NCBI GenBank assembly: GCA_002269645.1
Contig: NIVC01001350.1
Location: forward strand, 166,177 to 230,176
Source: Macrostomum lignano
Lineage: Eukaryota
Reading direction: 5' to 3'
DNA length: 64,000 nt
Positions 1,873 through 64,000 of the stretch are shown one piece after another. The translations under genes and the position numbers were made by a program. Below the pieces are notes generated by a model. That model did no database searches and had not been told where the DNA came from. It saw nothing but the letters and a program-made list of their open reading frames with translations. Position 1 is the first letter of the stretch. Each line of letters starts with the position of its first letter.

Positions 1873-3129
1873 TTAATAATATTCGTTGACATAAACACGT
1901 AGCACAGCCAGTGTCAGAGTGGGCAGAGTCATTAGCAGGGCAGTAGCGGTTTGCCAAGTTGCGCCGTTGCACAAACCGCGGTCGCTGCAGCAGCTGTAGC
2001 AGGTCTGGCCCCGTCTGCGGCACAGGTCCTTGGCTGAGGACTGCGGCTGTTGGCGGCATTGGCGGGCGTCCATGCAGCCCTGAGGGGCGATTTGATGATT
2101 TTGATTCTGTTATTAAATGATTCTCACTTGAGTCTCATCAGATTCTCACTTGAGTCTCATCAGATTCTCACTTGAGTCTCATCAGATTCTCACTTGAGTC
2201 TCATCACATTCTCACTTGTCTCATCACATTCTCACTTGAGTCTCATCAGATTCTCACTGGAATCTCATCAGATTCTCACTTGAGTCTCATCAGATTCTCA
2301 CTTGAGTCTCATCAGATTCTCACTGGAATCTCATCACATTCTCACTTGAGTCTCATCAGATTCTCACTGGAATCTCATCAGATTCTCACTGGAATCTCAT
2401 CACATTCTCACTTGAGTCTCATCAGATTCTCACTGGAATCTCATCAGATTCTCACTTGAGTCTCATCACATTCTCACTTGAGTCTCATCACATTCTCACT
2501 TGAGTCTCATCAGATTCTCACTTGAGTCTCATCAGATTCTCACTGGAATCTCATCAGATTCTCACTTGAGTCTCATCACATTCTCACTTGAGTCTCATCA
2601 GATTCTCACTTGAGTCTCATCAGATTCTCACTTGAGTCTCATCAGATTCTCACTTGAGTCTCATCAGATTTTCACTTGAGTCTCATCAGATTCTCACTTG
2701 AGTCTCATCAGATTTTCACTTGAGTCTCATCAGATTCTCACTTGAGTCTCATCACATTCTCACTTGAGTCTCATCAGATTCTCACTTGAGTCTCATCACA
2801 TTCTCACTTGAGTCTCATCAGATTCTCACTTGAGTCTCATCAGATTCTCACTTGAATGCCATCAGATTCCACTAAAATCTCACTAAGCGCCAGTGAAATA
2901 AGTTACTCTACTAATGAATTACACAAATGTAAGACACTGGCAAAATGCCCAGCACTTGCCATGGAGTAAACCTTGGCGGCCGGGATTCCTCTCGGGTCCG
3001 GGATCTCGGCTTTGAAGCAGCAGTGGGAAGCCGATCTGCATAGGGTCACGGTTGACAGGCAGATTGACAGGTCTTTGGATGAGCTGCAGCTGTAGCAGCT
3101 GAGCTGCTGGGTATGAGCTGTGCTGGCTG
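1873..3129 (-). CDS. Ly6/uPAR (three-finger) family GPI-anchored protein, last two coding exons; signal-peptide exon not identified
   Basis: Exon 3129-2960 (ACTAAC branch, CTGCAG acceptor, phase 1): ..QLSCYSCSSSKDLSICLSTVTLCRSASHCCFKAEIPDPRGIPAAKVYSM. Exon 2079-1873 (CCTCAG acceptor): GCMDARQC...CYSCCSDRGLCNGATWQTATALLMTLPTLTLAVLRVYVNEYY*. 10-Cys pattern with terminal CCxxxxxCN followed by a hydrophobic GPI-type tail. Confidence 0.85.
2119..2870. repeat. 22-bp minisatellite (GATTCTCACTTGAGTCTCATCA) filling the Ly6 intron
   Basis: Directly visible; about 34 copies with a few variant units. Confidence 0.97.
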
Positions 3130-6550: not shown

Positions 6551-8265
6551 TTAGTACACCTGCGAGTCTCTCAGCGGCGGCCGCCTCGACCGGTAAGCCG
6601 GCGCCTCGCCGTATCGATCGGCGGTCCGGTGCCGCAGGCTGCTGGCCAGCACCGGGTTGTAGCGCGAGTCCATCAGGGAGCTGCCCGAACCGGGCGCCAG
6701 GCACTCGGCCTCGCCCCATTCCGGGTACTCGTGCGCGAACGGCGCGTACGGCCGCTCGTAGTACCACAGCTCGCCGCTGGAGTCGCTCCGTCGAAGCCGC
6801 GACGCCGATGCCCGGCGTCGCCGAGATCCGCGTCGACCGTAGTCCTCGTAGTCGTAGTCAGCTCGGCGCCGATGCGTCGGAGAACTGTCCGCGCTGCCGC
6901 CGCCGCCGCCACCGCCTCCGCTGCGGCCTCCCTGGTAGCCCCAGGCGGTCTCGCCCAGCGCCTCCTCCTCCGGGTCCATCAGCTGACGCGGCGGCCGCAA
7001 CCGGGTGCGAATATTGTGCAGCACCGGCTTCCTGCCAGTCAGCCCGTCGGCCACGTGGCGCACCACGAACGGCGGCCGGTCGTCGGTGCGGTAGCCGGCC
7101 CGGCGGTCCTCGCCGGCTGCTGCGGTCGCTGAGTCGTCGACCTTCGACATCGACGGCGGCCGTTTGCCATGACGACGTGCTCGACGGTCGACGCTGTCGA
7201 TGGCGGCGGCGGCAGAGCGGCGCGGCTGGGTCACCTCCCCGCCGAAGTCGTCGCCAACGCTGCCAGAGTAGCTGGTGCGCAGCTCCTGAACCACGGTGTA
7301 AGTGCAGAACTCCAGCTTCGGGCTGACGCCGGAGAAGTCGACTGTGCGGGCCATCAGGGCCTCCCGGCCGGTGTGGCAGGCGGGCTTGGAGGTGGGGGCG
7401 CTGGGGAACAGAAACTCGCGTCCGTCCGAGTCGAAGTAGGCGAGCAAGCGGCTGCCGCGGAAGGCGTCGGTGGCCTGACGGAGCTCGATGGCGATGGGCA
7501 GCTCCTCCAGCCGGTCCACAACGTCGCGCGGGTCGGAGGCTGGCCAGAAGTTCTTCTCGAAGCGGAACCGCTCGTGGACTCGAAGTGGGAAGACGGGCGC
7601 CACTAGGCGGGAGCGCTTGACCTGCGGAGGGAATTTGGGAGCTCAGTGGTTGAGTTCCAGCTTCAGTGCGGGTGTCAGTCGGTTCAGAAGGATGTCAGGA
7701 TGTTTTTCAGGGATGTCAGACTCCTTGCGAAGAGGTCAAACTTTGAAGAGTGTCAAGATCTCTGCATGCATCAGAATGTCAGGATCTCAATGAAGATGTC
7801 ATGGTCTCTATAAAGATGTCATGGTCTCTATGAAGATGTCATGGTCTCTATGAGGATGTCAGGATCTCAATGAAGACGTCATGATCTCTATAAAGATGTC
7901 ATGGTCTCTATGAAGATGTCATGGTCTCTGATAATGTCAGGGTGTCATAAACGAAGATGCCAGTATCTCTATGAGAATTTAAGAATATTCATTCGAATGT
8001 CAAAACATTGATGTCACACTCCTTATCAACGAACCCGATAATATTTGTATGTAAAGAGATGTCATTTCAGTAGGACGGATACTTTCACGATATTGCCTAT
8101 AAAAGCTTAACAGAAACGAGTTTTTAAACAAAACAGCTGACTCCCAACCTGATTTAAGAAGTCAATTGTGAGGTAGACGTCGTCCCTATGAGGCAGCCAA
8201 GTACCGGGGGACACAACCAGCTCTATCGTTATTTCTGCCGTGCACCGAAATCCTTTTGGAGCCAT
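6551..8265 (-). CDS. SPATA6: SPATA6-family protein (N-terminal SPATA6 domain plus long low-complexity tail)
   Basis: Exon 8265-8149 MAPKGFRCTAEITIELVVSPGTWLPHRDDVYLTIDFLNQ (CAG|GTTGGG) joins in phase 0 to the exon starting 7621 (CCGCAG|) VKRSRLVAPVFPLRVHERFRFEKNF...VSPKLEFCTYTVVQE. This matches the SPATA6 pattern (..CPG..L...DIYL.I...Q; FPL...FEK.F; PKLEFST..VI.E). Stop at 6551, unless CAG|GTGTAC at 6560 is a further donor. Confidence 0.88.
7690..7940. repeat. Degenerate ~20-bp repeat (GATGTCATGGTCTCTATGAA) in SPATA6 intron 1
   Basis: Directly visible. Confidence 0.85.
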
Positions 8266-13276: not shown

Positions 13277-14235
13277 TGATGTAACCGCCCTTGTCGCCCG
13301 TCCGCTCCGCTGGGAGGCGAACGTATGACCAGAGGGGCCATGACCGTAGGCTGCCTATGACCGGGCAATGGCCTGACGGACCTCCAGCACCAGACTGTCC
13401 CGGCCACATGATTGATAGCTTTGGTAGCGCTTTCGTGACAAGAGGGCCAAGGACCCACATGGACCCCACCTGTAGCCAAGGTGCAATAGTCTGTCACTCG
13501 GTCAGAGCATGACCTGACCGAGTGGCTGCCACCACTCTATGTGACCTGGCGCACCTGGATCTTACTACCAGACCTCTCGAGGCTAGAGCCCCGCCTAGGA
13601 TGGTTACCAGGAGATTTAGGCTAACAGGGGAGACACATGCAGCCGAGTACAGGGACTCTGCTTGAGGCATGATCGGGAACTCTGGGCTCAATCTGGAGGA
13701 TTTCTCAGCAGGGGATCCTTTGTGGCTGTGAGCGAGGCGGACTTGCGGCTTCAATTACTAAGAGTAGTATGAGGCGAACATGTACTGTCTATAGTTTAGA
13801 TTGCTCAGGGCGAAGGGACGCGTCAGCATGGGGTTGCAACCTTCCTACTGCCATTCTGTGCCAAGACTCACTAATTCCCTCTACTGCCCTCACACACGGA
13901 CCCGCAGCACGCACACACAGGCGAGCTTTGCACGGGGAGAGGCCATTAGCTTACCCAAACTTCCTTATGCTTTGCCACCCAGGGAGAAAGGCATAGCAAG
14001 CCATGAATGAAATGATGGTGAAAGAGTGAATAATGAGGAGTTTAGTAATGGTTAATAATTAGGCCCTTAGGCAAATAATCAGGCAATTAGGCGGCTTCAC
14101 TATTGAGTAAAATACAGCAAAAAGTTACGGTATCACAATTTGCTCAGCTCTCTAATCAAGCAATGGGAAATAAGCAAACCCCGGATAAGCAAAGGCAATT
14201 AGAGCACAAATTAGTACAGGAACTCACCGGCAGCT

Positions 14236-14324
<89 letters not shown>

Positions 14325-15901
14325 CGGAGTGACCGAGGGCGGCTGTTGGCTGCAGACAGGCAGACTGTGAAGCGGCGATGCGCTGAAGCGACGAGGCGCT
14401 GATGTAGTTCAGGCAATGCTGAATATGCTGGGCGGTAACAGACCGCGGACCGGCAGATGAGCTCACTTGGGGAGCTGAGGTAACTTGGCGGTAACAGACC
14501 GCGGGCTGGCAGAGGTTCGTCCTAGACGAATGGGTCAGATCGGTGTCTGACAGCGTCATGAATCGGGCGCCATGTAGAGAAAACTAACGATTGAATTATG
14601 AGATATTTAATTGGAGTTAAATTGAATCTAAGATAAGCCAGTAAGTGGGCGCAGGGCCCAAACAAGTATATTTATACCAGACATTAACTTAGGGGGTTTG
14701 AATTGCAGATAATAAAGAGAGGGGGTGGAGTGCGCGACTGAGGAAAGAGGCGAGAACGGAGAGCCAATCAGAACGCAGCAAGGGAGAGAGAGAGATAAGA
14801 ATAACAAGATTGAGCTGGACAGAGAAGAGAGAAAACAGAGTAAACAGAGACAAGTGAAGGTGAACTAAGAAATGACTAGGAAAGTCGCGACACAGCGAGT
14901 CCACAGTAGGACGAGAAGGAACGCGAAGTCTGAGGGTTCTCACGCCGAAAACCGCTTCCTTAAATAGCCTTCCCAGCCGCCGCTCCAAGGTCGTTTCCAT
15001 GACTCCCTCTCTCTGATTGGCTGCCGGCGAAATGACGTCAGAATGAGTCAGAATGAGAAGTATGAGAACGACGGCATAGCAACATGAGAAATGGGGAAAT
15101 TGCGCAATCCGGAGGTGGGGTGGGGGATAATTGACGCAGCGGGAGGTCGAGAAAGTGTTGCGCAAGCAAACATTGAGAACAATGGGGCTGGGGTCAAGAA
15201 CAAAGGAAATGGAAATCGGGGATTATTGAGGAGAACCGAAAACAATAGAAAAGCAAACATTGGAAAAAAGGTGCTAATTGGGTGCGAAAAGGAGAACAAT
15301 AGAGAGAGAAAATCGGAGAAAATGTGATAATTAGGTGCGAAGACGAGAACAAAAGAATAAAAAACGAGAACAATAGAAGCGGAGGTGGGGTGGGTGTCGC
15401 ATGAGAAATATTGGGAGGAGAACAATGGCATGAGAAGAGGTTGCGCAAGAGGGGGTGATGAGTCATCGATGAGTCATCGAGGGGAAGGAGGGGTCAGAGG
15501 CCTTGCGTCACCGTTTGGGAGTTTAATAAGGGATGGGGTGACGGTGAGCGCCCAAAGTACTGTAAGTAGGCACGGGATGAGAGGGGACAGCGCAGGAAAA
15601 ACAGACCAAAAAGAGACAAAAGGATGGGAAGCGGGAGATGCACATGGTAGATAGGGTAGAGCGCATGGGAAACGGGGAGGCGGGTGAGGTGCAGTAAGAA
15701 AACGGGGCTCCGGAAAGGCATGTGTGGCGGAGTGGGAGCCGGAGACGAGACAGCAGGGGGGTGCAGCAGAGCGGGAGTCAGCAGGTCTGGTCAAGTACCT
15801 GGCCCAGTCTCGACGGCTCTGCCCAGTAGGTGCACGGAGATTGGAGGTACTTTCGAAAAATTTCCCTTGCCATATCCCGCGACCAGAGCGTGGTTACATC
15901 A
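13277..15901 (-). mobile_element. Non-coding ~2.6-kb insertion with imperfect terminal inverted repeats and an internal LTR-like segment plus PBS
   Basis: Ends TGATGTAACC / GGTTACATCA (10 bp perfect, ~23 bp imperfect), inserted in (GATT)n. Minus strand 15898-14573 runs TGTAAC...CTACA with TGACGTCA (15033-15040), CCAAT (15016-15020) and TATTTAA (14960-14966). It is followed directly by TGGCGCCCGATTCATGAC (14572-14555), a tRNA-Lys-like PBS. Confidence 0.6.
14239..14320. repeat. (GA)n microsatellite
   Basis: Directly visible. Confidence 0.97.
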
Positions 15902-27592: not shown

Positions 27593-29598
27593 TCAGCTGC
27601 GGTCGCCGCCGCCTCTTGCGCTGCGCTGCGCGCTGTAGGACTTCTTTGGCTGTTGTGGCTGCTGCGGACCGCTCTGGCCCTGGCTGCCGCCCCCGCCTCC
27701 GCCGCCTCCGCGACCGCCTCGACGAGAATAGGAAGCGGAAGAGCCGTCCTGTCTGTAGCCGCCGCTGCCGCCGGCCCCTCCGCCGCCATATTCTTCGTAG
27801 CCCCCAATGCCCTGCAAGTACTTGTAGTACTCTTGCTTATAATCGAAGTCTGTCTTCCGCCTGCCGCCGCCGCCGCCACCGCGTCCTCCGCCGGCGGCTC
27901 CGCGACCTCCGCCTCCGCCTCCACCGCGACTGTCTGCACTTGCTTGCTGCTTCTGCTGCTTCTGCTTTGGTTGCGCCGGTTTCTGTTGCTGCTGCTGCTG
28001 CTGCGGCTGCTGCTGCGGCGGAGGTGGCGGAGGCTGAGGTGGCGGAGGCTGAGGTGGCGGAGGCTTCTCATCCACAGAGTTTCTCTCGTCAGCGGCAGTT
28101 GCAGGCCTACGTTTTATTTCTATTACTTTAGTTGATGAGGATGATGCTGATGGAGGCTGGGAAGCTTGAGCAGTTTCAGGTTTGGCGCCTGCCGAAGCTT
28201 GCTTCTGCTGAGACTGCTGCTTCTGCTGAGACTGCTGCTTCGGCTTGCCCTGCTGCTGCTTTCGCTGCTTCTCCCGCTCCCGGTCGCGTTTCCGCCTGTC
28301 CTCATCGTCTCGCCGCCGCGCCTCGGCCTTGTCCCGCTGCTGGCGCTGCCGGTCCAGCCGCTTCTGCCGCAGGTGCAGCAGCAGCGGGGTCAGCTTGGAC
28401 GCGTCGGCAGCCTCGGCGGATTCTTTCTCGCGCCGGCGAATGGCTTCGAGGCTGGACTCCCAGGTCGGCGCCGGCCGGTCCGCTTCGGCCGCCAGGTCGG
28501 CCAGGAAGGCGGCGTACTCGGGCGTGGCCTCCAGAGTGCCCTGCTTCGGATTCGGCTTGGCCCTCTTGGCGCCGTCTGTCACCTGGAAAGGTATTGAACA
28601 AAAGCCGATGAGAACGGTGCCCAGGCCAAGAAGCATCCCAGAGTCATTTCAGACTCCTCGAAAATCACTTTGAAGCGTTTTATTGTCTGCGACTGTGAAA
28701 CAACTCTGGGGCCGTAGAATCGTATTTCAAGCGCATTTGAGCGCTAGAAAAGTCGCAGAAGAAGCGCTTCAGCGTCACTGATAGAATCGTTAGTGCGTCA
28801 CTTCTGAGACGCTCTGGACGCCCTATTAAACTCCAAGTGCACTCTAACTAGCCTACTGAGTTAGGGGAAGTCTAGGCATAGCATAAGGATTGTGGTCTAA
28901 GTGGTTAGAGCGTCGAAAGGTCGGGGGTTCGATTCTCGACCCACTTGGAACAATTTCATGTGTCCTTGAGCAAGACACTTAACTCTGCATTGCTTCAGTT
29001 CACATAGTTGTAAAATGGGTGCCAGCATTAGCTGGGGTAATTGAGGGTGCGTGGCAACCCCCAGTCCTAGGACTGAACAGCCGTACGCAGCCTTCAGATG
29101 CGCCGCGCAATAGCTGCGGCTGAGCTGTCGGTTGTACATCTGCCTATTAGGCATTATTATTATTTATTATTATTAGAGGACAGGTGAGAGCGGCAGAGAT
29201 GGAAGGGGAGTAGAGAGGAAAAGAGGCACTTGGCTGCAGAGGCCAGGCCTTACCTGGTAGGGCGCCAGCTCGACCAGAGCGGCCGACTCGACCCCCTTGG
29301 CATCCACGAAGACGTAGCCATCCCACTGCTGGCAGAAGGGCAGCAGGTCCTCCTTGTTGCTCAAGCAGACGTAGGCCCGGCAGAAGCCGAGCTCCGGGTC
29401 GGCAGGGCAGTAGCGAAATTCGCTGTGCTGGAACGGCAAGCTGCCAACCTGGGCGAGGAAGTCGGCCTCAGACAGGCCGGCAGGCAGGCGGCGGAGAACC
29501 ACCTTGGTTGGCTGCTGCTGCTTTGGCTTTGCCAATTTCTGCTTCTGCTGCAGCTTTGAAGAGCCACGCTGCTGTGGCTTATCCTTGCTGATTGAAGG
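27593..29598 (-). CDS. UPF3: Nonsense-mediated decay factor UPF3 (Smg4/UPF3 RRM-like domain plus charged and low-complexity C-terminus); initiation codon not found
   Basis: Exon 29598-29254 (TTTCCAG| phase 0): PSISK...KVVLRRLPAGLSEADF...FCRAYVCL...FCQQWDGYVFVDAKGVESAALVELAPYQ (|GTAAGG). Exon 28582-27593: VTDGAKRAKPNPKQGTLEATPEYAAFL..TPLLLHLRQKR. Matches the UPF3 motifs KVVIRRLPP, SRAYINF, FDGYVF.D.KG....A.VEFAP.Q, GTIE.DPEY..FL, TPLL. Confidence 0.92.
28886..29175 (+). mobile_element. tRNA-derived SINE with CORE-like central domain and (ATT)n tail, antisense in the UPF3 intron
   Basis: A-box TGGTCTAAGTGG (28893-28904), B-box GGTTCGATTC (28926-28935). GTGTCCTTGAGCAAGACACTTAAC...TGTAAAATGGG resembles the CORE-SINE (MIR/AFC) core; ATT-repeat tail. 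No clear TSD. Confidence 0.85.
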
Positions 29599-52932: not shown

Positions 52933-55905
52933 ATGGCCTGCAAACTCTTGGCCCTGCTGGTGGCGGTGCTGCTCGCCCTGCGCTGTCTCGAGGGCGACTC
53001 CGCCGAGCTGCGCGCGGTGGAGGGCGGCAGCGTCCTGCTAGACTGCCGGATTCCATCGTCAACAGGAACGCCACGTTCAGACGCCTCAGCAGTGAAGCAG
53101 CTCAGCCTCACCAAGTCAAACAAGCTCGCGTTCGAGCGGCACGGCAATTTCCCGGCCAGCCTTGGCAGCGGCTACTTCCACCGGCTGACAGTCCAGTCTC
53201 CGTCATCACGGATGCATCGGTTCAACCTGACTCATCTCCGGGAGAGGGACGACGGCCTGTACTTATGCCGTGTTGAGCTTGAGAATGGTGACAACAGCGT
53301 CCAGGAATTTCATCTTCAACTTTGGCTGCTGCCGAAGTTCGAGGCGAATGAATCGGCTGTACTGACCAGGACTCTTCACAGACAGGCTGGCGAATACGTT
53401 GTACTTCGGTGCCCGAAGTTCCGCGGCCGGCCCCAGCCGACTGTCTCCTGGCTGGTCAACGAGTGTCCCCTGGCCAACCGAGGCCGGGTTCGCATCGACC
53501 GGCACTTGCCGGAACAGTTGCAGGTGTACAACCTCAACGTCAACGATTCTGGCAGGTACGCCTGTCGCATAGAAAACCCTTACGGAGTGAGCGAACTCGA
53601 CTTCACAGTTCTGGTCGGCGCCGGCGCCGCCTTCATTCACCGGCCGCCGCCGAGTCAAACAACGGCACTCGAAGGCGCCCGACTGGAACTGCCGTGCGGC
53701 TTCCACGCTGACCCAGGCCTGCGCGCTAGAGTCGATTGGCAGCGAGCCCAGCCGGGTTCAAAGCTCAAACTCTGGACGTCGCTTCTCTCATCGCCCGATG
53801 CGTCCGTCGCCGTAGGCCACCAGAACAGCTCTTTGATTTTCCCCGCACTGGACCACAGTCACTCCGGAACCTACCGGTGCCAAGTCATGGTTGGATCGGA
53901 GCTGCACTTGACAAGCCGGCCCAGCGCCGTCACTGTGCTGCATCCGCCGACTTTATTGCCGAATTCTAGTCGAGACCAGTTCCTGCCGCTCGGCCAGCCG
54001 GGCTCGCTCACCTGTCCCGTGTTCGCTAATCCGCCAGTTGATACCACAGACTGGATTCGCAACAGCTCGCCCATTGGAGCGGCCTACCTGGGCAGGCGCT
54101 ACCGGTTCAACCTGGTCACACCGTCGCACTCCGGCAGGTACCGCTGTCGCGCGCTTCAAACTGCCAGCAGTTTCAACACCTGGAGCTCCTGGACGCCCGA
54201 GTTTACTGTTCAGACAGTGCAGTCGCCTCGGTTCATCGCCCGACCGTTGGCGCTGTACCAACTGGCTCTGGGAGAGTCGGTGCGAATGCCCTGCGCATTC
54301 TGGGCACCTTCGAATGTCCCCACCGGCCTTGTCTGGCTGCGCAACGGTCGGCGCCTTGACTACCGGGACAGGAGACTCGCATACGACCCGCTGGACCAGG
54401 AGCTGTCCGTTCGGGACGTCCAACCCGACCTTGAGGGGACCTACACCTGCGCTCTGGAGAACCCCGTGTTGCCATTGGCTGCTTCAGCGCGTCTACTGGT
54501 GGAGCTCACCTCTCCGCACCCGCCAGCCAACCTGACAGTCGTCAGCGTGACGCCCTTCTCCCTGCACCTGACGTGGCAGCCGGCTTATGACGCGGGTTGC
54601 GCGGTGCACTACACCGTCTGGTACCGGCGCCTGGGCGACAAGACCTGGAATAGGCAGCTGGCAGACCCGCCAACGGCCACCGAGGCCACGGTGACCAAGC
54701 TGCTAGCCGACACGGCCTACGAGCTGTCGCTAACGTCAAAATCGGTTGGCAGTTCGGCACTGGAGATGCGAGTCCGGCCAGAGACGACAGCCGGCCGAAC
54801 GGCTGGCTATTCGCCTGAGCTGGCCGACCGGCCGCTGCCCCGGGATCGCTCTGGACGGCCCTGGTTCCCGCCAATACAGCGCAGCTTGGGGCCTCGGCCG
54901 GGTCCGCCTGTGCCAGCCAGCTTCGATGTCGTCAGTGCCGGCGTTCTGTGTATCGCTTGGCAACCGCCGATGAGCACCCCGGTGCCGGTGCTCTACTACC
55001 GGCTTGAGGTTGGCGTTTGGGACTCGAGAGACGGAAGCCTCGATAAGGGAGACAGCTGGGAAGAATTCGCGCAGGTGCTTCAGCCGAAGGCATCGCTGTC
55101 CATCGACGCCCAGCCGCTACTCCGAGTTCAAGCTGCTCAGGCGGCCGCTACTCAAAGACGATTTCGCATAGCGGCAACCTCGTGCGCCCTGCTCAGCCGG
55201 AGCCGCCGCGTTGTTGTCGCCGATGTCGATCCAAGCCAGCTGTCCGAGCTGCTGCCCGCCGGCTCTGCGGCCGCCGCCCTGGCCTCCACAGGCGTCAACC
55301 GAGTGCCAGCCGGAGCCGCCTGGGCGCTGCTGTCCTGCCTGCTCAGCTTCCTGGTGCTGGCAGGCGCCCTGCTCGGCCTGACGCGCTCGTCCGCTCGCCG
55401 TTCGCCACGACGCATCGTTGTTGTCAACAAAAATGACGACGGCAGTCAACAGCGTCGAGGGAAACTCAACAAGCAGCACACGGCGGCTGACTTCTTGGCG
55501 GCGGAACCGCGGGGACGTCAGCCGCAGCTGCGTCGCCACCGATGTCGCACTCGACGCTGCTGCTGCCGTCAGCAACAGCTGGCAGCCACGGGCGCCTCCA
55601 GCGAGCACCCATTGCTGATGGCGTCAAGGCGCGGCCAGGTGGACAGGCCGGTCAGCGAGCCGGAGTCCGGCTTCCTGAGCGACGGCCGCGGAGGCGGCAG
55701 CCACTCAGACGATGAATGTCCGCCCGAAGCCAACGACGATGAGGTCAGCGTGTCGGACATTGAGTCGACTCTGCCGCCGGGCAGCTGGCAGGTGCACGGC
55801 TGGTCTCGACGGCTTCCCATTAGCGTCTATTTGGACAGCTACCACCGGATCAAGCGGCTGCGCAGGGCCAGTTTTCCGATTTATCGAGAGAGCGAACTAC
55901 TATGA
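52933..55905 (+). CDS. IGSF9: Turtle/IgSF9-like cell-adhesion receptor, 990 aa, single coding exon
   Basis: Signal peptide; five Ig domains (C...W...D/SGxYxC); two FN3; TM AWALLSCLLSFLVLAGALLGL; cytoplasmic tail. FLPLGQPGSLTCPVFANPPV and PHPPANLTV...LTWQPAYDAG...YTVWYR are turtle/IgSF9-like; the chain ends -LL. Confidence 0.85.
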   Translation: MACKLLALLVAVLLALRCLEGDSAELRAVEGGSVLLDCRIPSSTGTPRSDASAVKQLSLTKSNKLAFERHGNFPASLGSGYFHRLTVQSPSSRMHRFNLTHLRERDDGLYLCRVELENGDNSVQEFHLQLWLLPKFEANESAVLTRTLHRQAGEYVVLRCPKFRGRPQPTVSWLVNECPLANRGRVRIDRHLPEQLQVYNLNVNDSGRYACRIENPYGVSELDFTVLVGAGAAFIHRPPPSQTTALEGARLELPCGFHADPGLRARVDWQRAQPGSKLKLWTSLLSSPDASVAVGHQNSSLIFPALDHSHSGTYRCQVMVGSELHLTSRPSAVTVLHPPTLLPNSSRDQFLPLGQPGSLTCPVFANPPVDTTDWIRNSSPIGAAYLGRRYRFNLVTPSHSGRYRCRALQTASSFNTWSSWTPEFTVQTVQSPRFIARPLALYQLALGESVRMPCAFWAPSNVPTGLVWLRNGRRLDYRDRRLAYDPLDQELSVRDVQPDLEGTYTCALENPVLPLAASARLLVELTSPHPPANLTVVSVTPFSLHLTWQPAYDAGCAVHYTVWYRRLGDKTWNRQLADPPTATEATVTKLLADTAYELSLTSKSVGSSALEMRVRPETTAGRTAGYSPELADRPLPRDRSGRPWFPPIQRSLGPRPGPPVPASFDVVSAGVLCIAWQPPMSTPVPVLYYRLEVGVWDSRDGSLDKGDSWEEFAQVLQPKASLSIDAQPLLRVQAAQAAATQRRFRIAATSCALLSRSRRVVVADVDPSQLSELLPAGSAAAALASTGVNRVPAGAAWALLSCLLSFLVLAGALLGLTRSSARRSPRRIVVVNKNDDGSQQRRGKLNKQHTAADFLAAEPRGRQPQLRRHRCRTRRCCCRQQQLAATGASSEHPLLMASRRGQVDRPVSEPESGFLSDGRGGGSHSDDECPPEANDDEVSVSDIESTLPPGSWQVHGWSRRLPISVYLDSYHRIKRLRRASFPIYRESELL

Positions 55906-56176: not shown

Positions 56177-56961
<785 letters not shown>

Positions 56962-57711
56962 TTGAAATATCTCTGATTTTCTCTGATTTTTGTTCTTTGC
57001 TTCAGCTTATTAAAACCTGTTAAAAACAGAATGGAAAGGCAGCTGATGACCCGAATCGGTGCATAGAGAACTCATTTCTCTGGGGTAAGGTCGGCACAGA
57101 CACTGTACAAAACTTCTCTTCACTCAAGACCAGCTGTTGTCTGCTAGCGTTTAAGAGCTAAAAAATAGCAAACCACGGCAGAACAATGGGGCGCACACGC
57201 AGAGTGCTTCGGCAAGCTTTAGAACAGCCCAATGCATTTCTCGGTCCCACCCACCCCGTGTGAGCGCTGGCTTGTGTACTCCGGCGCTGGAGCCTCATTG
57301 GACTGCACTGCACTGAGAAGCTGAGCTGCAGCGCTCAGGGTGAGAGTGATTCCAGCCAGCTGCAGACAGAGGAGCAGAGCGAGGGAAAGGAAGGTGGCTG
57401 CAGAGCGGCCCCCGCCTCGGTTCTTTTCTCTCCCCGCAACCAACCCCCCTCCGTGCGCCTATATTTGAGTAAAGGGGATTATTGAGCTCAGTCACTTCCT
57501 AGTTTTGAATTCCACTCTAAAGGCTGCCACTCCACTGCAGATTGTTCTGACAATAATGTAAGCTTAGCCACTGTTGAGCCGCCGTCAAAATTCTCAGTTC
57601 AAAGCGATGTCGTCAGACTGCCAGAGCCTCCGCAGCAGCCGGACGGGCACGCACGAGCCGATCTGCAGCCTCGCCACCCGGCCCTGCTGGATCGAGTTCG
57701 GCGCCAGCCTC

Positions 57712-60700
57712 TTCTTCTTCTTCTTCTTCCCTTTTGTCGCCGTGTGGCATGGGCAGTCTTCGGGGTCTCTCGTCAGCAGTCCTTGCAGGTGCGTAGGTGG
57801 CGTGCCATGTTCGTCGCGGCGAGCGTGCGCCCACAACCTTCGCATTGTTTAGTTTTCGCTCGGTACTTCCTCTCACCTCCGGGGACCGTGTCTCTTCCCG
57901 CGTTGTACCGCAGGTTTTGCGGTGTCTCGCTAGGTTTGATTTCGATATTTCTCGAGCACAGGTCGCGCATTTTACGCGGTTTCCTCCCACTTCTCTCTCT
58001 CCTCCGCAGACCTTTACGTGGTTTAACCACGTTGCCTCTTGTCTGAACTGCTTCTCGCATTTTACGCACTTGAACGTTACTGGTTCTTCTATCTTGCGGT
58101 GCATCCTCTTTTGGTGAATGGTCAGGCCTGCTTTGCTTTTGCACTCCTTTCCGCAGTCTTCGTATTCACATATGAATGTTCTTGTTTTCTCCTGTTTCTG
58201 TTTGTCGTTCCTTTCGATGTTCCTTGCTTCTGCCTTCTTTCCTTGTTGTTGTTCCCATCTCTTGAGGTGGCTTATGCTTTCTTGAACAATTTTACGCCAT
58301 TTCTGGCGGTCGGTTGCTAGTCTCTCTGTCATTTCCGGCTCGATCCCTGCTTGGCGTAGTAGTCGCTTCCAGTATTCGATGGTGTTACCTTTTCTCTTAC
58401 GTGTTTTCCTTATCTTTTCCAGACCCTTGTACCATCCGAGAACCATCTTTTTCGTTAGGCGGTTCGCCTCCATGCGAAGCACATGTCCGATGCGGATCAG
58501 GTGGCTCTTCTCAATCTTTGTTTGTATTGTCGTTACTTCTAGTTCATTGCGAATGTCCTGCATATTTATTCCTTTTGCCTCCATTTCCCTTAGTGGTTCC
58601 ATTTTCCTGCTGCTCCATATCTGCCGGTAGATTCGGTCCATGAAGCTTTGTAGTTGCTTCGTTTCTGACTTCAGGAATGGGCGTATGTTCGCGTGGAATA
58701 GCAGGATGCTCTCTATACAGGCTTCAACGACCTTCGCTTGCGTGGTCTTTTTCAACCTGCACTTGATGAAACGTCTACGGATCGTCGACCAGCTTCTCGC
58801 CGCTTTTTGCAATCTCTGGCTCGTGTCGTACTTCGTGTCCGTCCATGATCCTAGCATGCGTACTTTTCCTCCCTCTCTGGTTCCGAATATCATTACCTCT
58901 TGCTTTTTGTCGTTCGTTTGTTCTTCGAATCCTGTCATTATTTCTTTCGTCGACTCTAGGCCCGCGCTGAGTTCCTTGCGGTTGCCTAGGATAGTGGTGT
59001 CGTCTGCAAATAGAACTGTCCTGATGAGTTCGGTTTTGGTCTCCGAGTTTGGCTGGTTTCTTCGCTGAGGTGGGAGTGAGCTTCCTGGGAGGTATGTCCA
59101 TTCAATTCCACATATTTGCTCTTTCTCCTTTGCTGTTTGTGTTCTTTTCTCCTCAACTTCCCTGATGCATGCTTGGTGAAAGATATTAAATAGAACTGGG
59201 GATGTCGGGCATCCTTCGCGTAGTCCTCTTTCTGGCAACCACGATTCACTGGACTGTTTCTTTCCTTTCACTTTAAACTCCGTGTATTCATGAAGGTCCT
59301 TCAATTTGTCAATCACTTTTTCCGGCAGGGCGTACTTCTGTAGTATCCCCCAAAGTACCGGTTTGCTGACTCTGGGGTATGCTTTCCGGAGGTCTAGGAG
59401 AAATGCTAGTTGGTCTTCTTCGAGGTTGCAGTCTCCTACGGCGTTTTTCGCCTGGCGGTATTCTGTTATGTCTTCTTGTATACGGATGATTATCTGGGTG
59501 CTGTCTGCCGTTGATCGGTTGGCTCTAAAGCCATTCTGATTGTCGTCAAGCGCCCCGACTCGTTCTGCCCAGTCCCGTAACCTTGAGGCGATGATTCTTG
59601 CCAATATGCGACTTAGCATCGGCAGGAGGCACACTCCTCGGTAATTGTTAAGGTCGGTCCTGTCCCCTTTCTTAAAGAGTGGTATGATAAGGCCTACCTT
59701 CTCACTGGCTTCCCAGTGCCACGCTCGGTGTTCGTATAGATATCGGATTCTTTCCGGACAGCTTCTCTAACTTCTTCGGGCCCTTCCTTAAGGTAGCGCA
59801 GGCGTACTTCGTCCTCTCCGGGCTTTTGTCCCTCATTTCTTTGATTGCTCTATCGATCTCCGCGTCGCTCGGTGTGTCGCTGAGTTCTTTGTATTCTTCC
59901 TTGCTAATGGTTTTACTTCCCGCTGGGGTTTTGAGGTTTCTAATGAGCTCTGCGATCTTCTCCGGTTCGTTCTCCATTCTTGTTTTCTGTATGTTTTCTA
60001 GGTGTTCCTTGAATTCTTGTTCGTCGATATTCGTGCCTCTTTCACTATTGTTGAAGGCCGTGCCTCTTTTGTCTAGGAGTCGGAGTTTGTCGTATACCAA
60101 CGCTATTTGTCCTTTGTCTGCTGCGTTTCTACATTCGTCGGCCAGTTGATCCCACCACTGTTCTTCCCACTCACTCACCGTGTTTTTTTGGGTTTTTCGT
60201 GTTTTTCTCAGCGCCTCTTCTGCTCTCTTCGTCTGCTCGCTTCTCGGGCCGTGGGTTTCCCTGGCCCTGTTCCTCTGTTGGAGTCTTACAGCCAATTCTT
60301 CATGCAGCCTCTTTAGGTCGTTTTCGTGGGATGACATCCACGGATTTGTTTGTCGGTTCGCTGGTCCGCAAATCGACTTTGCACTCTCCACGATTATTCT
60401 TTGCACTTCTGTCCATGGTGCTTGTTCTCTTTCCTCCTTGTTCTCCTTCCACGTTTGCATTCTTCTTTCCACCTCTTTTTTGAATTTCGTTGCGTTCTCT
60501 TCGTCATAGAGCTTCTTCCAGTTGATGCCTTGATTACTTCTCCTGTACAGTCTTTTTGCGTTCGGTCTTTTTCCTGTGTCGGCTACGCCCCTGATTATTA
60601 ATGTCTTTGGGATGTGGTCGGACAGTGCACAGCCGTTGTGATTTTTTATTGATTTTATGATTTTATTACGGTCCTCTGCTCTTGTCGCGAATCCATCAAT

Positions 60701-61792
60701 TTCGTACCATCTTCCGTTACTTGGGTTCTGCCATGTCCCTCGTCGTTTTTGGTGGTAGAACGAGTTTACCCATGCGAGGTCGTTGGATGTCAACCAGTTC
60801 ACTAGGTCTTCTCCCTGCTTATTTGTTGTCTCCAAGCCAAATTTCCCTCTGTTTGATGTTGGTTTTTCTGAGTTTTTGCCAATCTGAGCATTGAAATCTC
60901 CTCCTATAATCAGTGGTCTTGGTGTCTTATCCACATGGATGTACCGTTCAATCTCATGTCGGAGTGCAGCCAGCTCTGTTTCGTATTGTTGACTGCCCAT
61001 GACCGGACTATAGATGCTGATGATTGATAACTTGTAGATTTCAAGCATAACCGCTCTCTCGCACCTCGTTACCTTTGCTCCGCTCTCTCTCCAGATGGGT
61101 GTGCCATTCGTCATTGAGTACAATTCCCGCTTTCCTGCTGTGAATCAGGTGGACATTCTTTCCTTTTTGGTGGTAGCTTCTTATTCCATCGTCTGGTGCT
61201 CTAAGTTCTGAGATTAGAGTGATTTGCCAGTTCTCTGTCATTATTTTCTTCGTTATCTCTCCGAAGCGTCTGTCCAGGATGTTAGCTCTCTGCACGTTCC
61301 ATGTTGTGATTCGAGTCTCCTCTTCAAGTCTCTTCTGTCTGCGGTTCTTCTCGTTTTGCTTCCTTCTTGTCCTTCTTTCTTTCCGTCTTTCATTTCTCCT
61401 CTTCTTCCATTCACTTGTCTTTTTTTTTGGTTTGCGCTCGTTTTTATTCGTTTTTGTTTGTTTTTTAGGTGCTTCCTGTGCTCTCGGTCCCGGATTCTTT
61501 TCAATAGTTCTTTAGTCTTATTCTTATTATTTCTGCAAGGTGTCTCTTCTTCTTCTTGATGTTGGTCCTGCTTGTTCTCTTTCTCTTCTCATCCCCGTCT
61601 CGACTGTGGTTGGCCTGGTGTTGTGCGGCAGCTAGGTCGGCCATGGCTACCTGCCGTTGCTGAAAAGGGCCGGTTGCACAGTTCCGACTTGCGTCGTGGG
61701 CTGGGCTCCGTGCCGGATTCCCTCTGTGTCTTCTTTGCCAGGATGCGTGACCGCATCCTGTCCGCTTGTCACCTCGGGAAGGTGAGACACAA
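57712..61792 (-). mobile_element. Full-length (4081 bp) RTE-like non-LTR retrotransposon: APE endonuclease, RT and C-terminal zinc fingers
   Basis: 14-bp TSD TCGGCGCCAGCCTC (57698-57711, 61793-61806); (GAA)n 3' tail. APE motifs TWNV, LISEL, GGDFNAQIG, YEIDGF, SDH; RT motifs QNGFRANRSTAD, DLRKAYPRV, GLREGCPTSPVLFN, LFADD; four CxxC/CxxxxC..H..H/C fingers. Confidence 0.96.
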
Positions 61793-62344
61793 TCGGCGCC
61801 AGCCTCATCAGCATCGTCCTCGGCATCGTCTGCGTCCTGGCCGGCGCCGCAACGACAGCAGCGCCGTGTCGGCAACCATCGGCGACAGCGGCGCCTCAGT
61901 TGGCGCCAAAGCCGCAACCTACCTGGGTGTGGCGCTATTGATTCTCGGCGCACTGCTCATGCTCGTCTTCGGACTGCACTTCCGGCTGGTGAAGCGACAG
62001 CTCGACCGTGACGCCTGCTGCGCTGCGCTCGGCTGGGCATCGGCCGGCAGCAGCAGGTACTCCGCCCTGCCCGATCTGCCCGCGCGGCCCGCCATCGCCG
62101 CCCTGACAGCTGCACCAGCGGGCTCCGACGGCTGCACCAACCCGGCTTTCGTCGGCGTCTCAACTAGCGAGTACCCGGACGTCGCGGACTCGAGGCCTCC
62201 GGCCGGCTCCGGAGAGTCTTTCTCGTCGGCGTCCACAAGCGGCATTGGCAGCTGCAGTCCAGCGAGCAGCAGCAGTGGTGGCAGCCTTGCCGAACCGTGG
62301 TACAGCTCTCGCCGTGAACAACTGCAGCAGCACGAACGGCATGC

Positions 62345-62712
62345 AGCACCAGCCAGCCCCACCAGCCCAGCACCAGCAGCACCGAGCAGCACCAGCAGCA
62401 CCAGCAGCACCAGCAGCACCAGCAGCACCAGCAGCACCACCAGCACCAGCAGCACCAGCAGCACCAGCAGCACCAGCAGCACCAGCAGCACCAGCAGCAC
62501 CAGCAGCACCACAGCAGCACCAGCAGCAGCGCACCAGCAGCACAGCAGCAGTACCTGCAGCAGCACCAGAAGCACCAGCAGCACCAGCAGCACCAGCAGC
62601 ACCAGCAGCCACCAGCAGCACCAGCAGCACCAGCAGCACCAGCAGCACCAGCAGCACCAGCAGCACCAGCAGCACCAGCAGCACAAGCAGCACCAGCAGC
62701 ACCAGCAGCCTC
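62345..62712. repeat. 9-bp (CAGCAGCAC)n repeat inside the 2-TM gene coding region
   Basis: Directly visible; read as poly-SST then poly-QQH. Confidence 0.96.
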
Positions 62713-63019
62713 AGCCTCTTCCGGCACCACAGCACAGGTCAAAGTTTGCTGCCTATGGATACAGATCTTCACAGATATAATGGAGTCTTACTCTTGGACG
62801 TCCAGATCGTGATGCTATAAGCTTTCTCATTGTGCTGCGACCTTTCTGATGCGTTCTTAGAGCAGTGCTGCTGTGCTGACTCAATTGACAGCTATTTTCT
62901 AATTGAGTCAATGACCCACTGACCGAATAATTGTAGACTCAAGCGTGCTTGATCAATATATATCAACAGTATGATGAACATTGAGTCACGATCAACGACC
63001 AACCAATCCATTCTCATCT

Positions 63020-64000
63020 GAGTCCCTTGACCCCAATCCCATTGTGAGTCCCATGACCCCAATCCCGTTGTGAGTCCCATGACCCCAGTCCCGTTGTGAG
63101 TCCCATGACCCCAATCCCGTTGTGAGTCCCATGACCCCAGTCCCGTTGTGAGTCCCATGACCCCAATCCCGTTGTGAGTCCCATGACCCCAATCCCGTTG
63201 TGAGTCCCATGACCCCAATCCCGTTGTGAGTCCCATGACCCCAGTCCCGTTGTGAGTCCCATGACCCCAATCCCGTTGTGAGTCCCATGACCCCAATCCC
63301 GTTGTGAGTCCCATGACCCCAGTCCCGTTGTGAGTCCCATGACCCCAGTCCCAGTCCATGACCCCAATCCCATTGTGAGTCCCATGACCCCAATCCCGTT
63401 GTGAGTCCCATGACCCCAATCCCGTTGTGAGTCCCATGACCACAATCCCGTTGTGAGTCCCATGACCCCAGTCCCGTTGTGAGTCCCATGACCCCAGTCC
63501 CGTTGTGAGTCCCATGACCCCAATCCCATTGTGAGTCCCATGACCCCAATCCCGTTGTGAGTCCCATGACCCCAATCCCGTTGTGAGTCCCATGACCCCA
63601 ATCCCGTTGTGAGTCCCATGACCCCAGTCCCGTTGTGAGTCCATGACCCCAATCCCGTTGTGAGTCCCATGACCCAATCCCGTTGTGAGTCCCATGACCC
63701 CAGTCCCGTTGTGAGTCCCATGACCCCAATCCCGTTGTGAGTCCCATGACCCCAATCCCGTTGTGAGTCCCATGACCCCAATCCCGTTGTGAGTCCCATG
63801 ACCAATCCCGTTGTGAGTCCCATGACCCCAATCCCGTTGTGAGTCCCATGACCCCAATCCCGTTGTGAGTCCCATGACCCCAATCCCGTTGTGAGTCCCA
63901 TGACCCCAATCCCGTTGTGAGTCCCATGACCCCAATCCCGTTGTGAGTCCCATGACCCCAGTCCCGTTGTGAGTCCCATGACCCCAATCCCGTTGTGAGT
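63020..64000. repeat. 26-bp minisatellite (CCCCAATCCCGTTGTGAGTCCCATGA); runs off the window end
   Basis: Directly visible. Confidence 0.98.

What the first reader, a model, noticed from the sequence alone, without database searches (positions are those of the whole stretch)
57607..62780. Full-length LINE inserted into the coding exon of a membrane-protein gene
The 14-bp TSD encodes FGASL at the start of the first TM helix. Removing 57712-61806 restores a continuous reading MSSDCQ...WIEFGASL-ISIVLGIVCVLAG. This is a clean, recent insertional knockout in antisense orientation, possibly polymorphic, or tolerated because a duplicate copy exists.
Basis: seen in the sequence. Interest (0 to 1): 0.7.

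Follow-up and report, generated by a model that had tools for sequence, protein, structure and literature searches.

The report
LINE insertion disrupting a flatworm membrane-protein gene
One copy of a small flatworm-specific membrane-protein gene in a Macrostomum genome has been broken by a 4.1-kb LINE retrotransposon, while an uninterrupted copy of the same locus exists in the published M. lignano assembly; this is ordinary gene decay in a recently duplicated genome.

Summary
A 4,081-bp non-LTR retrotransposon (57712-61792, minus strand) lies between two perfect 14-bp target-site duplications (TCGGCGCCAGCCTC, at 57698-57711 and 61793-61806). It encodes a 2A-like NPGP motif, an AP endonuclease, a reverse transcriptase and four C-terminal zinc fingers, and ends in a (GAA)6 tail.

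The window is from Macrostomum, either M. lignano or a very close relative. A syntenic locus in M. lignano assembly Mlig_3_7 (L001) is 93-96% identical.

That gene encodes a two-transmembrane protein. Its only detectable relatives are four M. lignano paralogues (Mlig026798 g1-g4). The insertion splits the first helix after residue 35.

- The LINE is full-length in extent, but its reading frame is broken by 4-5 frameshifts.
- The host copy has further 1-nt indels, so removing the LINE gives a 79-codon ORF that stops at 61941, not a restored gene.

I read this as pseudogenisation of one redundant copy in a neopolyploid genome. I could not tell whether L001 is a paralogue, an allele or an orthologue. 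Interest is low.

The parts
57460..57493 (+). Candidate core promoter of the host gene: TATATTT (57460-57466) and an Inr-like TCAGTC (57488-57493) 30 nt downstream. An AG at 57596-57597 could be a (trans-)splice acceptor 9 nt before the ATG.
   Evidence: Read directly from the sequence. The block is conserved in L001. This is inference only, with no transcript data.
57607..57711 (+). Host gene CDS, codons 1-35 (MSSDCQ...CWIEFGASL). It includes the conserved THEPIC...CWIEFGASL motif and the first three residues of TM1.
   Evidence: 100% nucleotide identity to L001 over these codons. Aligns to M. lignano P0124 across the junction, E=3e-14.
57698..57711 (.). Left copy of the target-site duplication, TCGGCGCCAGCCTC.
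57712..61792 (-). Non-LTR retrotransposon (LINE), 4,081 bp, with a single-ORF architecture. It is full-length in extent but its frame is broken by 4-5 frameshifts.
   Evidence: Pfam domains. Aligns to residues 8-1089 of the 1106-aa P0071 and residues 127-1309 of the intact 1317-aa P0129, in four frame segments. No long terminal repeats. Absent from L001.
57712..57729 (-). 3' tail (GAA)6, which reads (TTC)6 on the + strand. A 43-nt 3' UTR follows at 57730-57772, and the stop codon is at 57773-57775.
   Evidence: The relative L002 ends in a (GATGC)n/(GAT)n tail.
57782..58176 (-). Four C-terminal zinc fingers, one C2H2 and three C2HC-like. The last finger is in a different frame, with the frameshift at about 57862.
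   Evidence: zf-C2H2 hit at residues 487-512 of the 673-aa ORF. Motifs located. Frame change seen.
58852..59682 (-). Reverse transcriptase domain, from PLFKKGD to FADD at 59010-58999.
   Evidence: RVT_1 E=3.6e-16. Motif coordinates.
60614..61307 (-). AP-endonuclease domain (TTWNVQ, ISELRA, GGDFNA, YEIDGF, LSDH). It is split by a frameshift at about 61100-61115.
   Evidence: Exo_endo_phos_2 E=4e-9. Motifs. Frame change seen.
61485..61505 (-). 2A-like motif IEKNPGP upstream of the endonuclease. The probable start codon is the ATG at 61644-61642 (MADLAAAQ...), in another frame. The 5' UTR is 61792-61645.
   Evidence: Relatives carry NDIEPNPGP (L002 and P0129) and IHPNPGP (P0071).
61793..61806 (.). 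Right copy of the target-site duplication, TCGGCGCCAGCCTC.
61807..61941 (+). Host CDS continuing in the frame of the ATG. It covers the rest of TM1 (ISIVLGIVCVLAGAA, to about 61851) and then out-of-frame sequence ending at TGA 61939-61941.
61849..61850 (+). Site of a 1-nt deletion relative to L001 (GCCG-CAACGAC against GCCGCCAACGAC). It shifts the rest of the gene out of frame.
   Evidence: The paralogue P0124 (AGVSADSSAV) supports the L001 reading AGAANDSSAV.
61851..62780 (+). Remainder of the host CDS, read in the +2 frame. It comprises the DSSAV loop, TM2 (AATYLGVALLILGALLMLVFGLHF, 61911-61982), a Ser/Thr/Gln-rich tail, the native C-terminus GYRSSQI and the stop at 62778-62780. Further indels against L001 lie at 62012 (-1), about 62048 (+1) and 62295 (-1).
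   Evidence: Hydropathy analysis of the intact copy shows two hydrophobic segments, residues 29-50 and 71-97.
62325..62709 (+). CAGCAGCAC repeat inside the host CDS. It is read partly as poly(STS) in the window copy and as poly(HQQ) in L001.

Best explanation
An APE-type LINE integrated by target-primed reverse transcription into the single coding exon of one genomic copy of a Macrostomum-restricted gene for a two-transmembrane protein. The + strand was nicked after ...GCCAGCCTC, and the 3' end (...CTC) could pair with the (GAA)n RNA tail. Second-strand cleavage 14 bp away produced the 14-bp duplication. These mechanistic steps are inferred from the anatomy. The element lies antisense to the gene and separates residues 1-35 from the rest of the protein, so this copy can at best give an 81-residue product without intact transmembrane helices. 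The copy is now a pseudogene, because it also carries frameshifting 1-nt indels. The LINE itself is a dead copy with 4-5 frameshifts, although every catalytic motif is still recognisable. The loss is probably tolerated because the genome holds other copies. An uninterrupted, annotated copy of the same locus exists in M. lignano Mlig_3_7, and a paralogous gene is present in four copies. M. lignano is a neopolyploid in which about 85% of the genome is present in three paralogous copies.
For: - TSD and element anatomy.
- Species: the neighbouring Ig/FN3 gene is 97% identical in protein to M. lignano BOX15_Mlig031011g1.
- Empty site: it lies in syntenic locus L001 (GCA_002269645.1, NIVC01000237.1), inside a called 326-aa gene. 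The predicted 24-mer is present there once, and the flank matches overlap by exactly 14 bp.
- The host gene is real. L001 protein against P0124 gives E=9e-33 over 115 aa. The two proteins share THEPIC..CWIEFGASL, two hydrophobic helices, LGIxPxSRYxxLP and a C-terminal GYRSSQI. Mlig_3_7 annotation is transcriptome-based (PMC5730564).
- Redundancy: about 85% of the genome is in three paralogous copies, with a paralogue SNP rate of 2.2% genome-wide and 1.1% in CDS (PMC10733133). Mlig026798 g1-g4 exist.
- The indels are probably real rather than assembly errors. The adjacent 2,964-nt Ig CDS has no frameshift against L001, only one in-frame 9-nt indel, and pN/pS 0.24. The 598-nt host CDS has four 1-nt indels.
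- The LINE is younger than the split between the two loci, because it is absent from L001. Its frameshift density, about 5 in 3.9 kb, is below the noncoding indel density between the loci, about 1% of sites.
Against: - No reads, transcripts or second assembly of the window's own genome were available.
- The window's Ig protein, junction ORFs and LINE ORFs are not on record in the gene-position collection. The assembly, and therefore the species or strain, is not identified.
- Divergence from L001 is about twice the published mean between M. lignano paralogues: 2.1% in the Ig CDS and about 4.9% in noncoding flanks. L001 could therefore be an orthologue in a sibling species or strain rather than a paralogue.
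- No other copy of this LINE family was seen. The best database proteins are only about 50% identical, so its age and activity cannot be measured.
- Several indels lie in short C or A runs, so assembly error is not excluded for any individual indel.
Confidence: 0.85

Rival explanations
1. L001 is not a paralogue in the same genome. It is the allele or orthologue of the same locus in another line or sibling species. On that reading the insertion is a segregating polymorphism or a lineage-specific difference, and redundancy at this locus is not shown.
For: - The window's proteins are not on record, whereas Mlig_3_7 proteins are.
- Only one Mlig031011 copy (g1) is annotated, and its cluster has a single member.
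- Divergence is about twice the published paralogue mean (against PMC10733133).
- No M. lignano protein resembles this LINE at more than about 53% identity.
Against: - The published distribution of paralogue divergence is broad, and 2-5% is not outside what a recent duplication could give.
- The Mlig_3_7 assembly is known to miss or collapse copies.
- The related Mlig026798 gene still supplies four paralogues.
Confidence: 0.3
2. The host copy was already a pseudogene, through frameshift mutations, when the LINE landed. The LINE would then be a passenger in dead DNA rather than the cause of the knockout.
For: - The host CDS has four 1-nt indels in 598 nt, polarised to the window copy by the outgroup P0124.
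- This density (0.67%) is close to the noncoding indel density between the loci (about 1%) and several times that of the LINE (about 0.13%).
Against: - Numbers are small.
- Two of the indels (62012 -1 and about 62048 +1) compensate each other within 36 nt, and the native C-terminus and stop are still in an open frame. Only one net frameshift, at 61850, separates the N- and C-terminal parts.
- Substitution divergence of the host CDS (about 2%) is at the coding level, not the noncoding level.
Confidence: 0.3
3. The frameshifts in the LINE and in the host gene are assembly or polishing errors. On that reading the LINE is an intact, possibly active copy, and the host gene is disrupted by the insertion alone, as the reader's 'clean' knockout.
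For: - There are no in-frame stop codons inside any homologous segment of the LINE, and all catalytic motifs are intact.
- The TSDs are perfect.
- Several indels are length changes of short C or A runs.
Against: - The adjacent 2,964-nt Ig CDS is free of frameshifts in both assemblies, so the local indel error rate is low.
- The frameshift at about 61100 is not in a homopolymer.
- Five independent errors in 3.9 kb plus four in 0.6 kb would be a very uneven error distribution.
Confidence: 0.15
4. The flanks are not a gene. On that reading the ORF is a chance open frame in GC-rich, CAG-repeat DNA, or the last exon of the upstream Ig gene.
For: - There was no hit for the joined protein in the word-indexed search and no Pfam family.
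- The repeat part of the ORF is open in all frames, and the two copies read it in different frames.
Against: - The exhaustive search found M. lignano paralogues with 53% identity over 115 residues, and these also share the extreme C-terminus.
- A gene is called at the empty locus.
- The Ig ORF has its own signal peptide, TM segment, cytoplasmic tail and stop codon, and about 0.8 kb of (TGTC)n lies between the two genes.
Confidence: 0.03

Closest known systems
Exonic LINE insertions that inactivate genes, such as de novo L1 insertions in mammalian disease genes, and transposon-mediated loss of duplicate genes after whole-genome duplication
   Same: Integration is by target-primed reverse transcription, with a short TSD and a 3' repeat tail. 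The insertion lies within a coding exon and truncates the ORF. An intact duplicate remains.
   Different: The host is a flatworm and the LINE is not L1. The element is full-length rather than 5'-truncated. The disrupted gene is a lineage-restricted orphan of unknown function.
L1Tc/Ingi (trypanosomatid LINEs) and the related animal Vingi clade
   Same: All have a single long ORF with an N-terminal 2A-like NPGP motif, an AP endonuclease, a reverse transcriptase and C-terminal C2H2-type zinc fingers. For L1Tc, the N-terminal 2A motif, AP endonuclease, RT and RNase H come from the main text of PMC3383444; its C-terminal C2H2 fingers with nucleic-acid chaperone activity rest only on the title of its reference 13 (Heras et al. 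2005), seen in that paper's reference list and not read. Vingi is reported as single-ORF (PMC3708506).
   Different: Pfam detects no RNase H domain in the element or in three full-length relatives. No 2A motif was reported for Vingi. Clade assignment by RT phylogeny could not be done here.
CR1 / L2 / Rex1 / Crack group LINEs with 2A-like sequences (Odon et al. 2013, PMC3708506)
   Same: A 2A-like motif lies immediately upstream of the endonuclease in single-ORF elements of marine invertebrates, including Branchiostoma. The 3' tail is a simple repeat rather than poly(A). That simple-repeat tails are typical of this group is from my own knowledge.
   Different: As far as I know, C-terminal C2H2/C2HC fingers are not a described hallmark of these clades. 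The paper did not list flatworms among the hosts.
M. lignano BOX15_Mlig026798 g1-g4 (hypothetical proteins PAA71072.1, PAA71029.1, PAA68237.1, PAA79092.1)
   Same: 53% identity over the N-terminal 115 residues, two TM helices, the conserved motifs THEPIC, CWIEFGASL, DSSAV and LGIxPxSRY, and the C-terminal GYRSSQI.
   Different: The low-complexity cytoplasmic tail is longer and different, and the locus is different. No function is known for either gene.

Membership tests
APE-type non-LTR retrotransposon (LINE) | Encodes an apurinic/apyrimidinic-type endonuclease N-terminal to the RT | tested here: met
   Exo_endo_phos_2 E=4e-9. The motifs TTWNVQ, ISELRA, GGDFNA, YEIDGF and LSDH are present.
APE-type non-LTR retrotransposon (LINE) | Encodes a reverse transcriptase with a YxDD/FADD box | tested here: met
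   RVT_1 E=3.6e-16. FADD lies at 59010-58999. There are 131 homologues at up to E=4e-185.
APE-type non-LTR retrotransposon (LINE) | No long terminal repeats; the 3' end is a simple-repeat or A-rich tail | tested here: met
   The only direct repeats in 57400-62100 are the TSD and short chance matches. The (GAA)6 tail is at 57712-57729.
APE-type non-LTR retrotransposon (LINE) | Flanked by a target-site duplication, with an empty site demonstrable | tested here: met
   Perfect 14-bp TSD. The empty site in L001 contains a single copy of the 14-mer.
Intact (autonomous) LINE copy | Uninterrupted ORF from the start codon to the stop | tested here: not met
   Homology to P0071, P0037, P0002, P0052 and P0129 runs through four frame segments, and the start codon and 2A leader are in a further frame. 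An intact relative has one ORF of 1317 aa.
Full-length LINE copy (not 5'-truncated) | Covers the whole coding region of intact relatives plus a 5' UTR | tested here: met
   Aligns from residue 8 of P0071 and contains the 2A-like motif, with about 290 nt further upstream that include an ATG.
Ingi clade (L1Tc/Ingi) | RNase H domain between the RT and the C-terminal fingers | tested here: not met
   No RNase H hit at E<=1 in the inter-domain region or in P0002, P0037 and P0071.
Ingi/Vingi or CR1-group clade assignment | Placement of the RT domain in a reference phylogeny (RTclass1/Repbase) | not testable with these tools
   No reference LINE library was available. The Vingi description paper is not held.
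Mlig026798-like two-TM protein family (host gene) | Conserved N-terminal motif, two hydrophobic helices and the C-terminal GYRSSQI | tested here: met
   The window copy retains all of these, but they are split by the LINE and lie in two frames.
Known Pfam membrane-protein family (host gene) | Significant match to a curated family | tested here: not met
   Only sub-threshold hits, with E>=0.03.

The most novel reading that the evidence does not exclude
There are two speculative readings, and they could both hold. First, this LINE family may be a still-active, undescribed 2A-containing single-ORF lineage in Macrostomum, whose insertions differ between subgenomes or individuals. Second, the insertion may have created a new gene form. 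An ATG at 61743, in the antisense 5' end of the LINE, opens a 345-codon ORF. Because of the 1-nt deletion at 61850, this ORF is in frame with TM2 and the native C-terminus. If an antisense promoter in the LINE 5' end drives it, the product would be an N-terminally replaced single-TM protein.
Probability: 0.08. Interest if true: 0.45.

Novelty: new member of a known kind. Interest (0 to 1): 0.25.

Why it matters
This is a well-documented example, with both the filled site and the empty site in hand, of transposon-mediated loss of one gene copy in the neopolyploid model flatworm Macrostomum lignano or a close relative. It can serve as a marker to tell paralogous or allelic copies apart. It shows that a 2A-containing, zinc-finger-bearing LINE was mobile after the duplication or split. 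It also gives a first family description for an unannotated two-TM orphan gene. None of this challenges current understanding.

Tried and rejected
- The word-indexed homology search with the joined host protein found nothing. Low-complexity words probably saturated the candidate list. The exhaustive search then found the paralogues.
- Exact-protein look-ups found nothing on record for the window's Ig ORF, the two junction ORFs and the two LINE ORFs. I therefore could not recover the window's own assembly, other individuals or other LINE copies.
- Rfam found nothing in the window.
- The bacterial promoter/terminator scan is irrelevant here and was empty.
- I considered the idea that the host ORF is the last exon of the upstream Ig gene. 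I rejected it because that ORF is complete, with a signal peptide, TM segment, tail and stop.
- I considered a programmed frameshift in the endonuclease, because the relative L002 is also frameshifted within about 8 codons of the window element's shift. I rejected it because intact members of that family (P0129, 1317 aa) read through in one frame.
- I tried to assign the LINE clade from the literature. The Vingi paper is not held, and the other papers give the architecture only.
- No other copy of the LINE is present in the window or in L001, at either DNA or protein level.

Full report
**What is in the sequence**

The 14-mer TCGGCGCCAGCCTC occurs at 57698-57711 and again at 61793-61806. Immediately after the left copy comes (TTC)6, which is a (GAA)6 tail on the minus strand. 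Immediately before the right copy the homology to LINE proteins and their upstream leader ends. The intervening 4,081 bp (57712-61792) encode an endonuclease, a reverse transcriptase and C2H2 zinc fingers on the minus strand. The Pfam matches are Exo_endo_phos_2 at E=4e-9, RVT_1 at E=3.6e-16 and zf-C2H2. There are no long terminal repeats. A 14-mer at both boundaries is not a chance event; the expectation is about 1e-6 even with generous slack in the boundaries.

**Organism and the empty site**

The window is animal DNA. It contains a complete single-exon Ig/FN3 receptor-like gene at 52933-55905, plus SPATA6-like and UPF3-like exons. The Ig protein is 97% identical to Macrostomum lignano BOX15_Mlig031011g1.

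I fetched that gene's locus from assembly Mlig_3_7 (GCA_002269645.1, contig NIVC01000237.1), which is L001 here. It is a syntenic region of at least 12 kb at 85-96% nucleotide identity. Window 56692-57711 matches L001 13234-14240, and window 61793-62628 matches L001 14227-15045. The two matches therefore overlap in L001 by exactly the 14 bp of the duplication.

This is direct proof of an insertion event with target-site duplication.

**The host gene is real**

At the empty site, L001 carries a called gene (14136-15116) for a 326-residue protein. It has two hydrophobic segments, at residues 29-50 and 71-97. The insertion falls between L35 and I36, three residues into the first segment.

An exhaustive phmmer search of 1.84 billion representative proteins with the right-flank translation found only two relatives. 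They are M. lignano BOX15_Mlig026798g2 and g3, and g1 and g4 also exist. These proteins are 53% identical to the L001 protein over 115 residues (E=9e-33). They share THEPIC...CWIEFGASL, both helices, a DSSAV loop, LGIxPxSRYxxLP and the extreme C-terminus GYRSSQI.

The window's joined N-terminus aligns to these proteins straight across the junction (E=3e-14). No Pfam family matches, and nothing was found outside Macrostomum. The gene therefore belongs to a lineage-restricted two-TM family of unknown function. The C-terminal S-x-I could be a PDZ ligand, but that is my inference only. The Mlig_3_7 annotation is transcriptome-based (PMC5730564), which argues that the gene is expressed.

The host gene is also a separate unit from the Ig gene. 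The upstream Ig ORF ends with its own TM segment, cytoplasmic tail and stop codon, and about 0.8 kb of (TGTC)n lies in between.

**The LINE**

On its sense (minus) strand the element has these parts:
- a 5' UTR at 61792-61645;
- an ATG at 61644;
- a 2A-like motif IEKNPGP at 61505-61485;
- a basic stretch;
- the endonuclease at 61307-60614;
- the RT, with its FADD box at 59010-58999;
- four C2H2/C2HC fingers at 58176-57782;
- a stop codon at 57775-57773;
- a 43-nt 3' UTR and the (GAA)6 tail.

The element aligns to residues 8-1089 of the 1106-aa relative P0071 and to residues 127-1309 of an intact 1317-aa relative, P0129. It is therefore full-length in extent.

It is not intact. The homology runs through four frame segments, with breaks near 61100, 59821, 59752 and 57862. 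The start codon and leader lie in yet another frame relative to the 2A motif, with that break near 61505. There are no in-frame stops inside the segments, and all catalytic motifs are preserved, so the copy is not old.

The closest database proteins are only about 50% identical. Most come from unnamed ENA eukaryotic contigs, and the named ones are from Branchiostoma and acoels. A relative, L002, has the canonical NDIEPNPGP motif and a (GAT)n tail.

The architecture is 2A, APE, RT and C-terminal C2H2 fingers in a single ORF. This matches L1Tc/Ingi except that no RNase H domain is detectable; L1Tc's C-terminal C2H2 fingers are known to me only from the title of reference 13 of PMC3383444 (Heras et al. 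2005), not from a text I read. 2A-like motifs are also described in CR1, L2, Rex1 and Crack elements (PMC3708506). I could not assign the clade with the tools at hand.

**The knockout is not clean**

Against L001, the window's host CDS has these differences:
- a 1-nt deletion at 61850;
- a 1-nt deletion at 62012;
- a compensating +1 near 62048;
- a 1-nt deletion at 62295;
- length changes in the CAG/CAC repeat.

The outgroup paralogue supports the L001 frame at the first three sites (AGVSADSSAV and AERFAQLGIQPSSRY), so these changes are derived in the window copy.

The consequence is that the joined ORF stops at 61939-61941 after 79 codons. TM2, the tail and the native stop at 62780 are read in a different frame.

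The neighbouring 2,964-nt Ig CDS has no frameshift between the two assemblies. It shows 2.13% substitutions, one in-frame 9-nt indel and pN/pS 0.24. The local indel error rate is therefore low, and I take the host and LINE indels as probably real. This is not proven, because several of them are length changes of short C or A runs.

**Timing and redundancy**

The LINE is absent from L001, so it inserted after the two loci diverged. The divergence figures are pS about 0.05 in the Ig gene and about 4.9% substitutions with about 1% indel events in about 2.3 kb of noncoding flank. The LINE's frameshift density, about 5 in 3.9 kb, is below the noncoding indel density, which is consistent with an insertion clearly younger than the split. 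The perfect TSDs are uninformative at this divergence.

The host CDS has a higher indel density, 4 in 598 nt. One possibility is that the gene copy was already decaying when the LINE arrived. Against this, two of the four indels compensate each other and the numbers are small.

M. lignano is a neopolyploid in which about 85% of the genome exists in three paralogous copies. The published paralogue SNP rates are 2.2% genome-wide and 1.1% in CDS (PMC10733133). The window-L001 pair is about twice as divergent as that mean. None of the window's ORFs is on record in the gene collection. I therefore cannot say whether L001 is a paralogue in the same genome, an allele, or the orthologue in a sibling line or species. 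Either way, an intact copy of this gene exists in the species complex, and a paralogous gene is present in four copies.

**Verdict**

The predicted empty allele was found letter for letter. Two corrections are needed: the LINE is a dead copy, and the host copy has additional lesions.

Biologically this is ordinary: a transposon-associated pseudogenisation of one redundant gene copy in a repeat-rich, recently duplicated flatworm genome. The minor new points are an undescribed LINE lineage with a 2A-like motif in a flatworm and a first description of an orphan two-TM gene family.

Noticed in passing
window 61485-61505 (minus strand); L002 about 2664: The LINE carries a 2A-like 'ribosome-skipping' motif (IEKNPGP) just upstream of its endonuclease. 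Relatives have NDIEPNPGP or IHPNPGP. Such motifs are described for Rex1, L2, L2A, Crack, CR1 and Ingi LINEs in chordates, molluscs, echinoderms and cnidarians (PMC3708506). Flatworms are not among the hosts listed there.
   Followed up: partly
window 61743-62780 (+): An ATG inside the antisense 5' end of the LINE opens a 345-codon ORF. Because of the 1-nt deletion at 61850, this ORF is in frame with TM2, the tail and the native C-terminus GYRSSQI of the host protein. It is a possible chimeric ORF. There is no evidence that it is transcribed.
   Followed up: no
window about 61100 and L002 about 2990-3000: The window LINE and an only 36-50% identical relative from an unrelated ENA contig both have a +1 frame change within about 8 codons of each other in the endonuclease domain. 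Intact members of the relative's family (P0129, 1317 aa) read through in one frame, so this looks like coincidence and not programmed frameshifting.
   Followed up: yes
window 62325-62709 and L001 14760-15045: The CAGCAGCAC repeat in the host gene is open in all frames. It is translated partly as poly(Ser-Thr-Ser) in the window copy and as poly(His-Gln-Gln) in L001. The two copies also differ there by several indels.
   Followed up: partly
window 52933-55905 (+): A complete single-exon gene encodes a 990-aa receptor-like protein with a signal peptide, a V-set domain, about four Ig domains, an FN3 domain, a TM segment and a cytoplasmic tail. It is 97% identical to M. lignano BOX15_Mlig031011g1, with pN/pS 0.24 against that copy. 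The next-best hit in the protein search was a mammalian nephrin at 30% identity over 21% of the query.
   Followed up: partly
window 56179-56960; 63019-64000; whole window: The window is packed with tandem repeats (35 TRF rows). Examples are (TGTC)~195 between the Ig gene and the host gene, and a 26-nt unit at 63019-64000 that is shared with L001. The latter produces long spurious minus-strand ORFs such as 62892-63953. Repeat-made ORFs elsewhere give misleading Pfam hits; for example, 45-863 matches ALTTAQ_rpt and Sep15_SelM.
   Followed up: partly
window 57460-57493 and 57596-57597: TATATTT and TCAGTC lie 30 nt apart, about 115 nt upstream of the host ATG, and are conserved in L001. They are a candidate TATA/Inr core promoter. 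An AG 9 nt before the ATG could be a spliced-leader acceptor, since 38.8% of M. lignano genes are trans-spliced according to PMC5730564.
   Followed up: no
window 6551-7603 (-) and 27593-28636 (-): There are GC-rich exons with SPATA6 (E=1e-24) and Smg4/UPF3 (E=3e-9) domains. The window alternates between GC-rich coding blocks (about 0.6 GC) and AT-rich or repeat blocks (about 0.33-0.4 GC).
   Followed up: no
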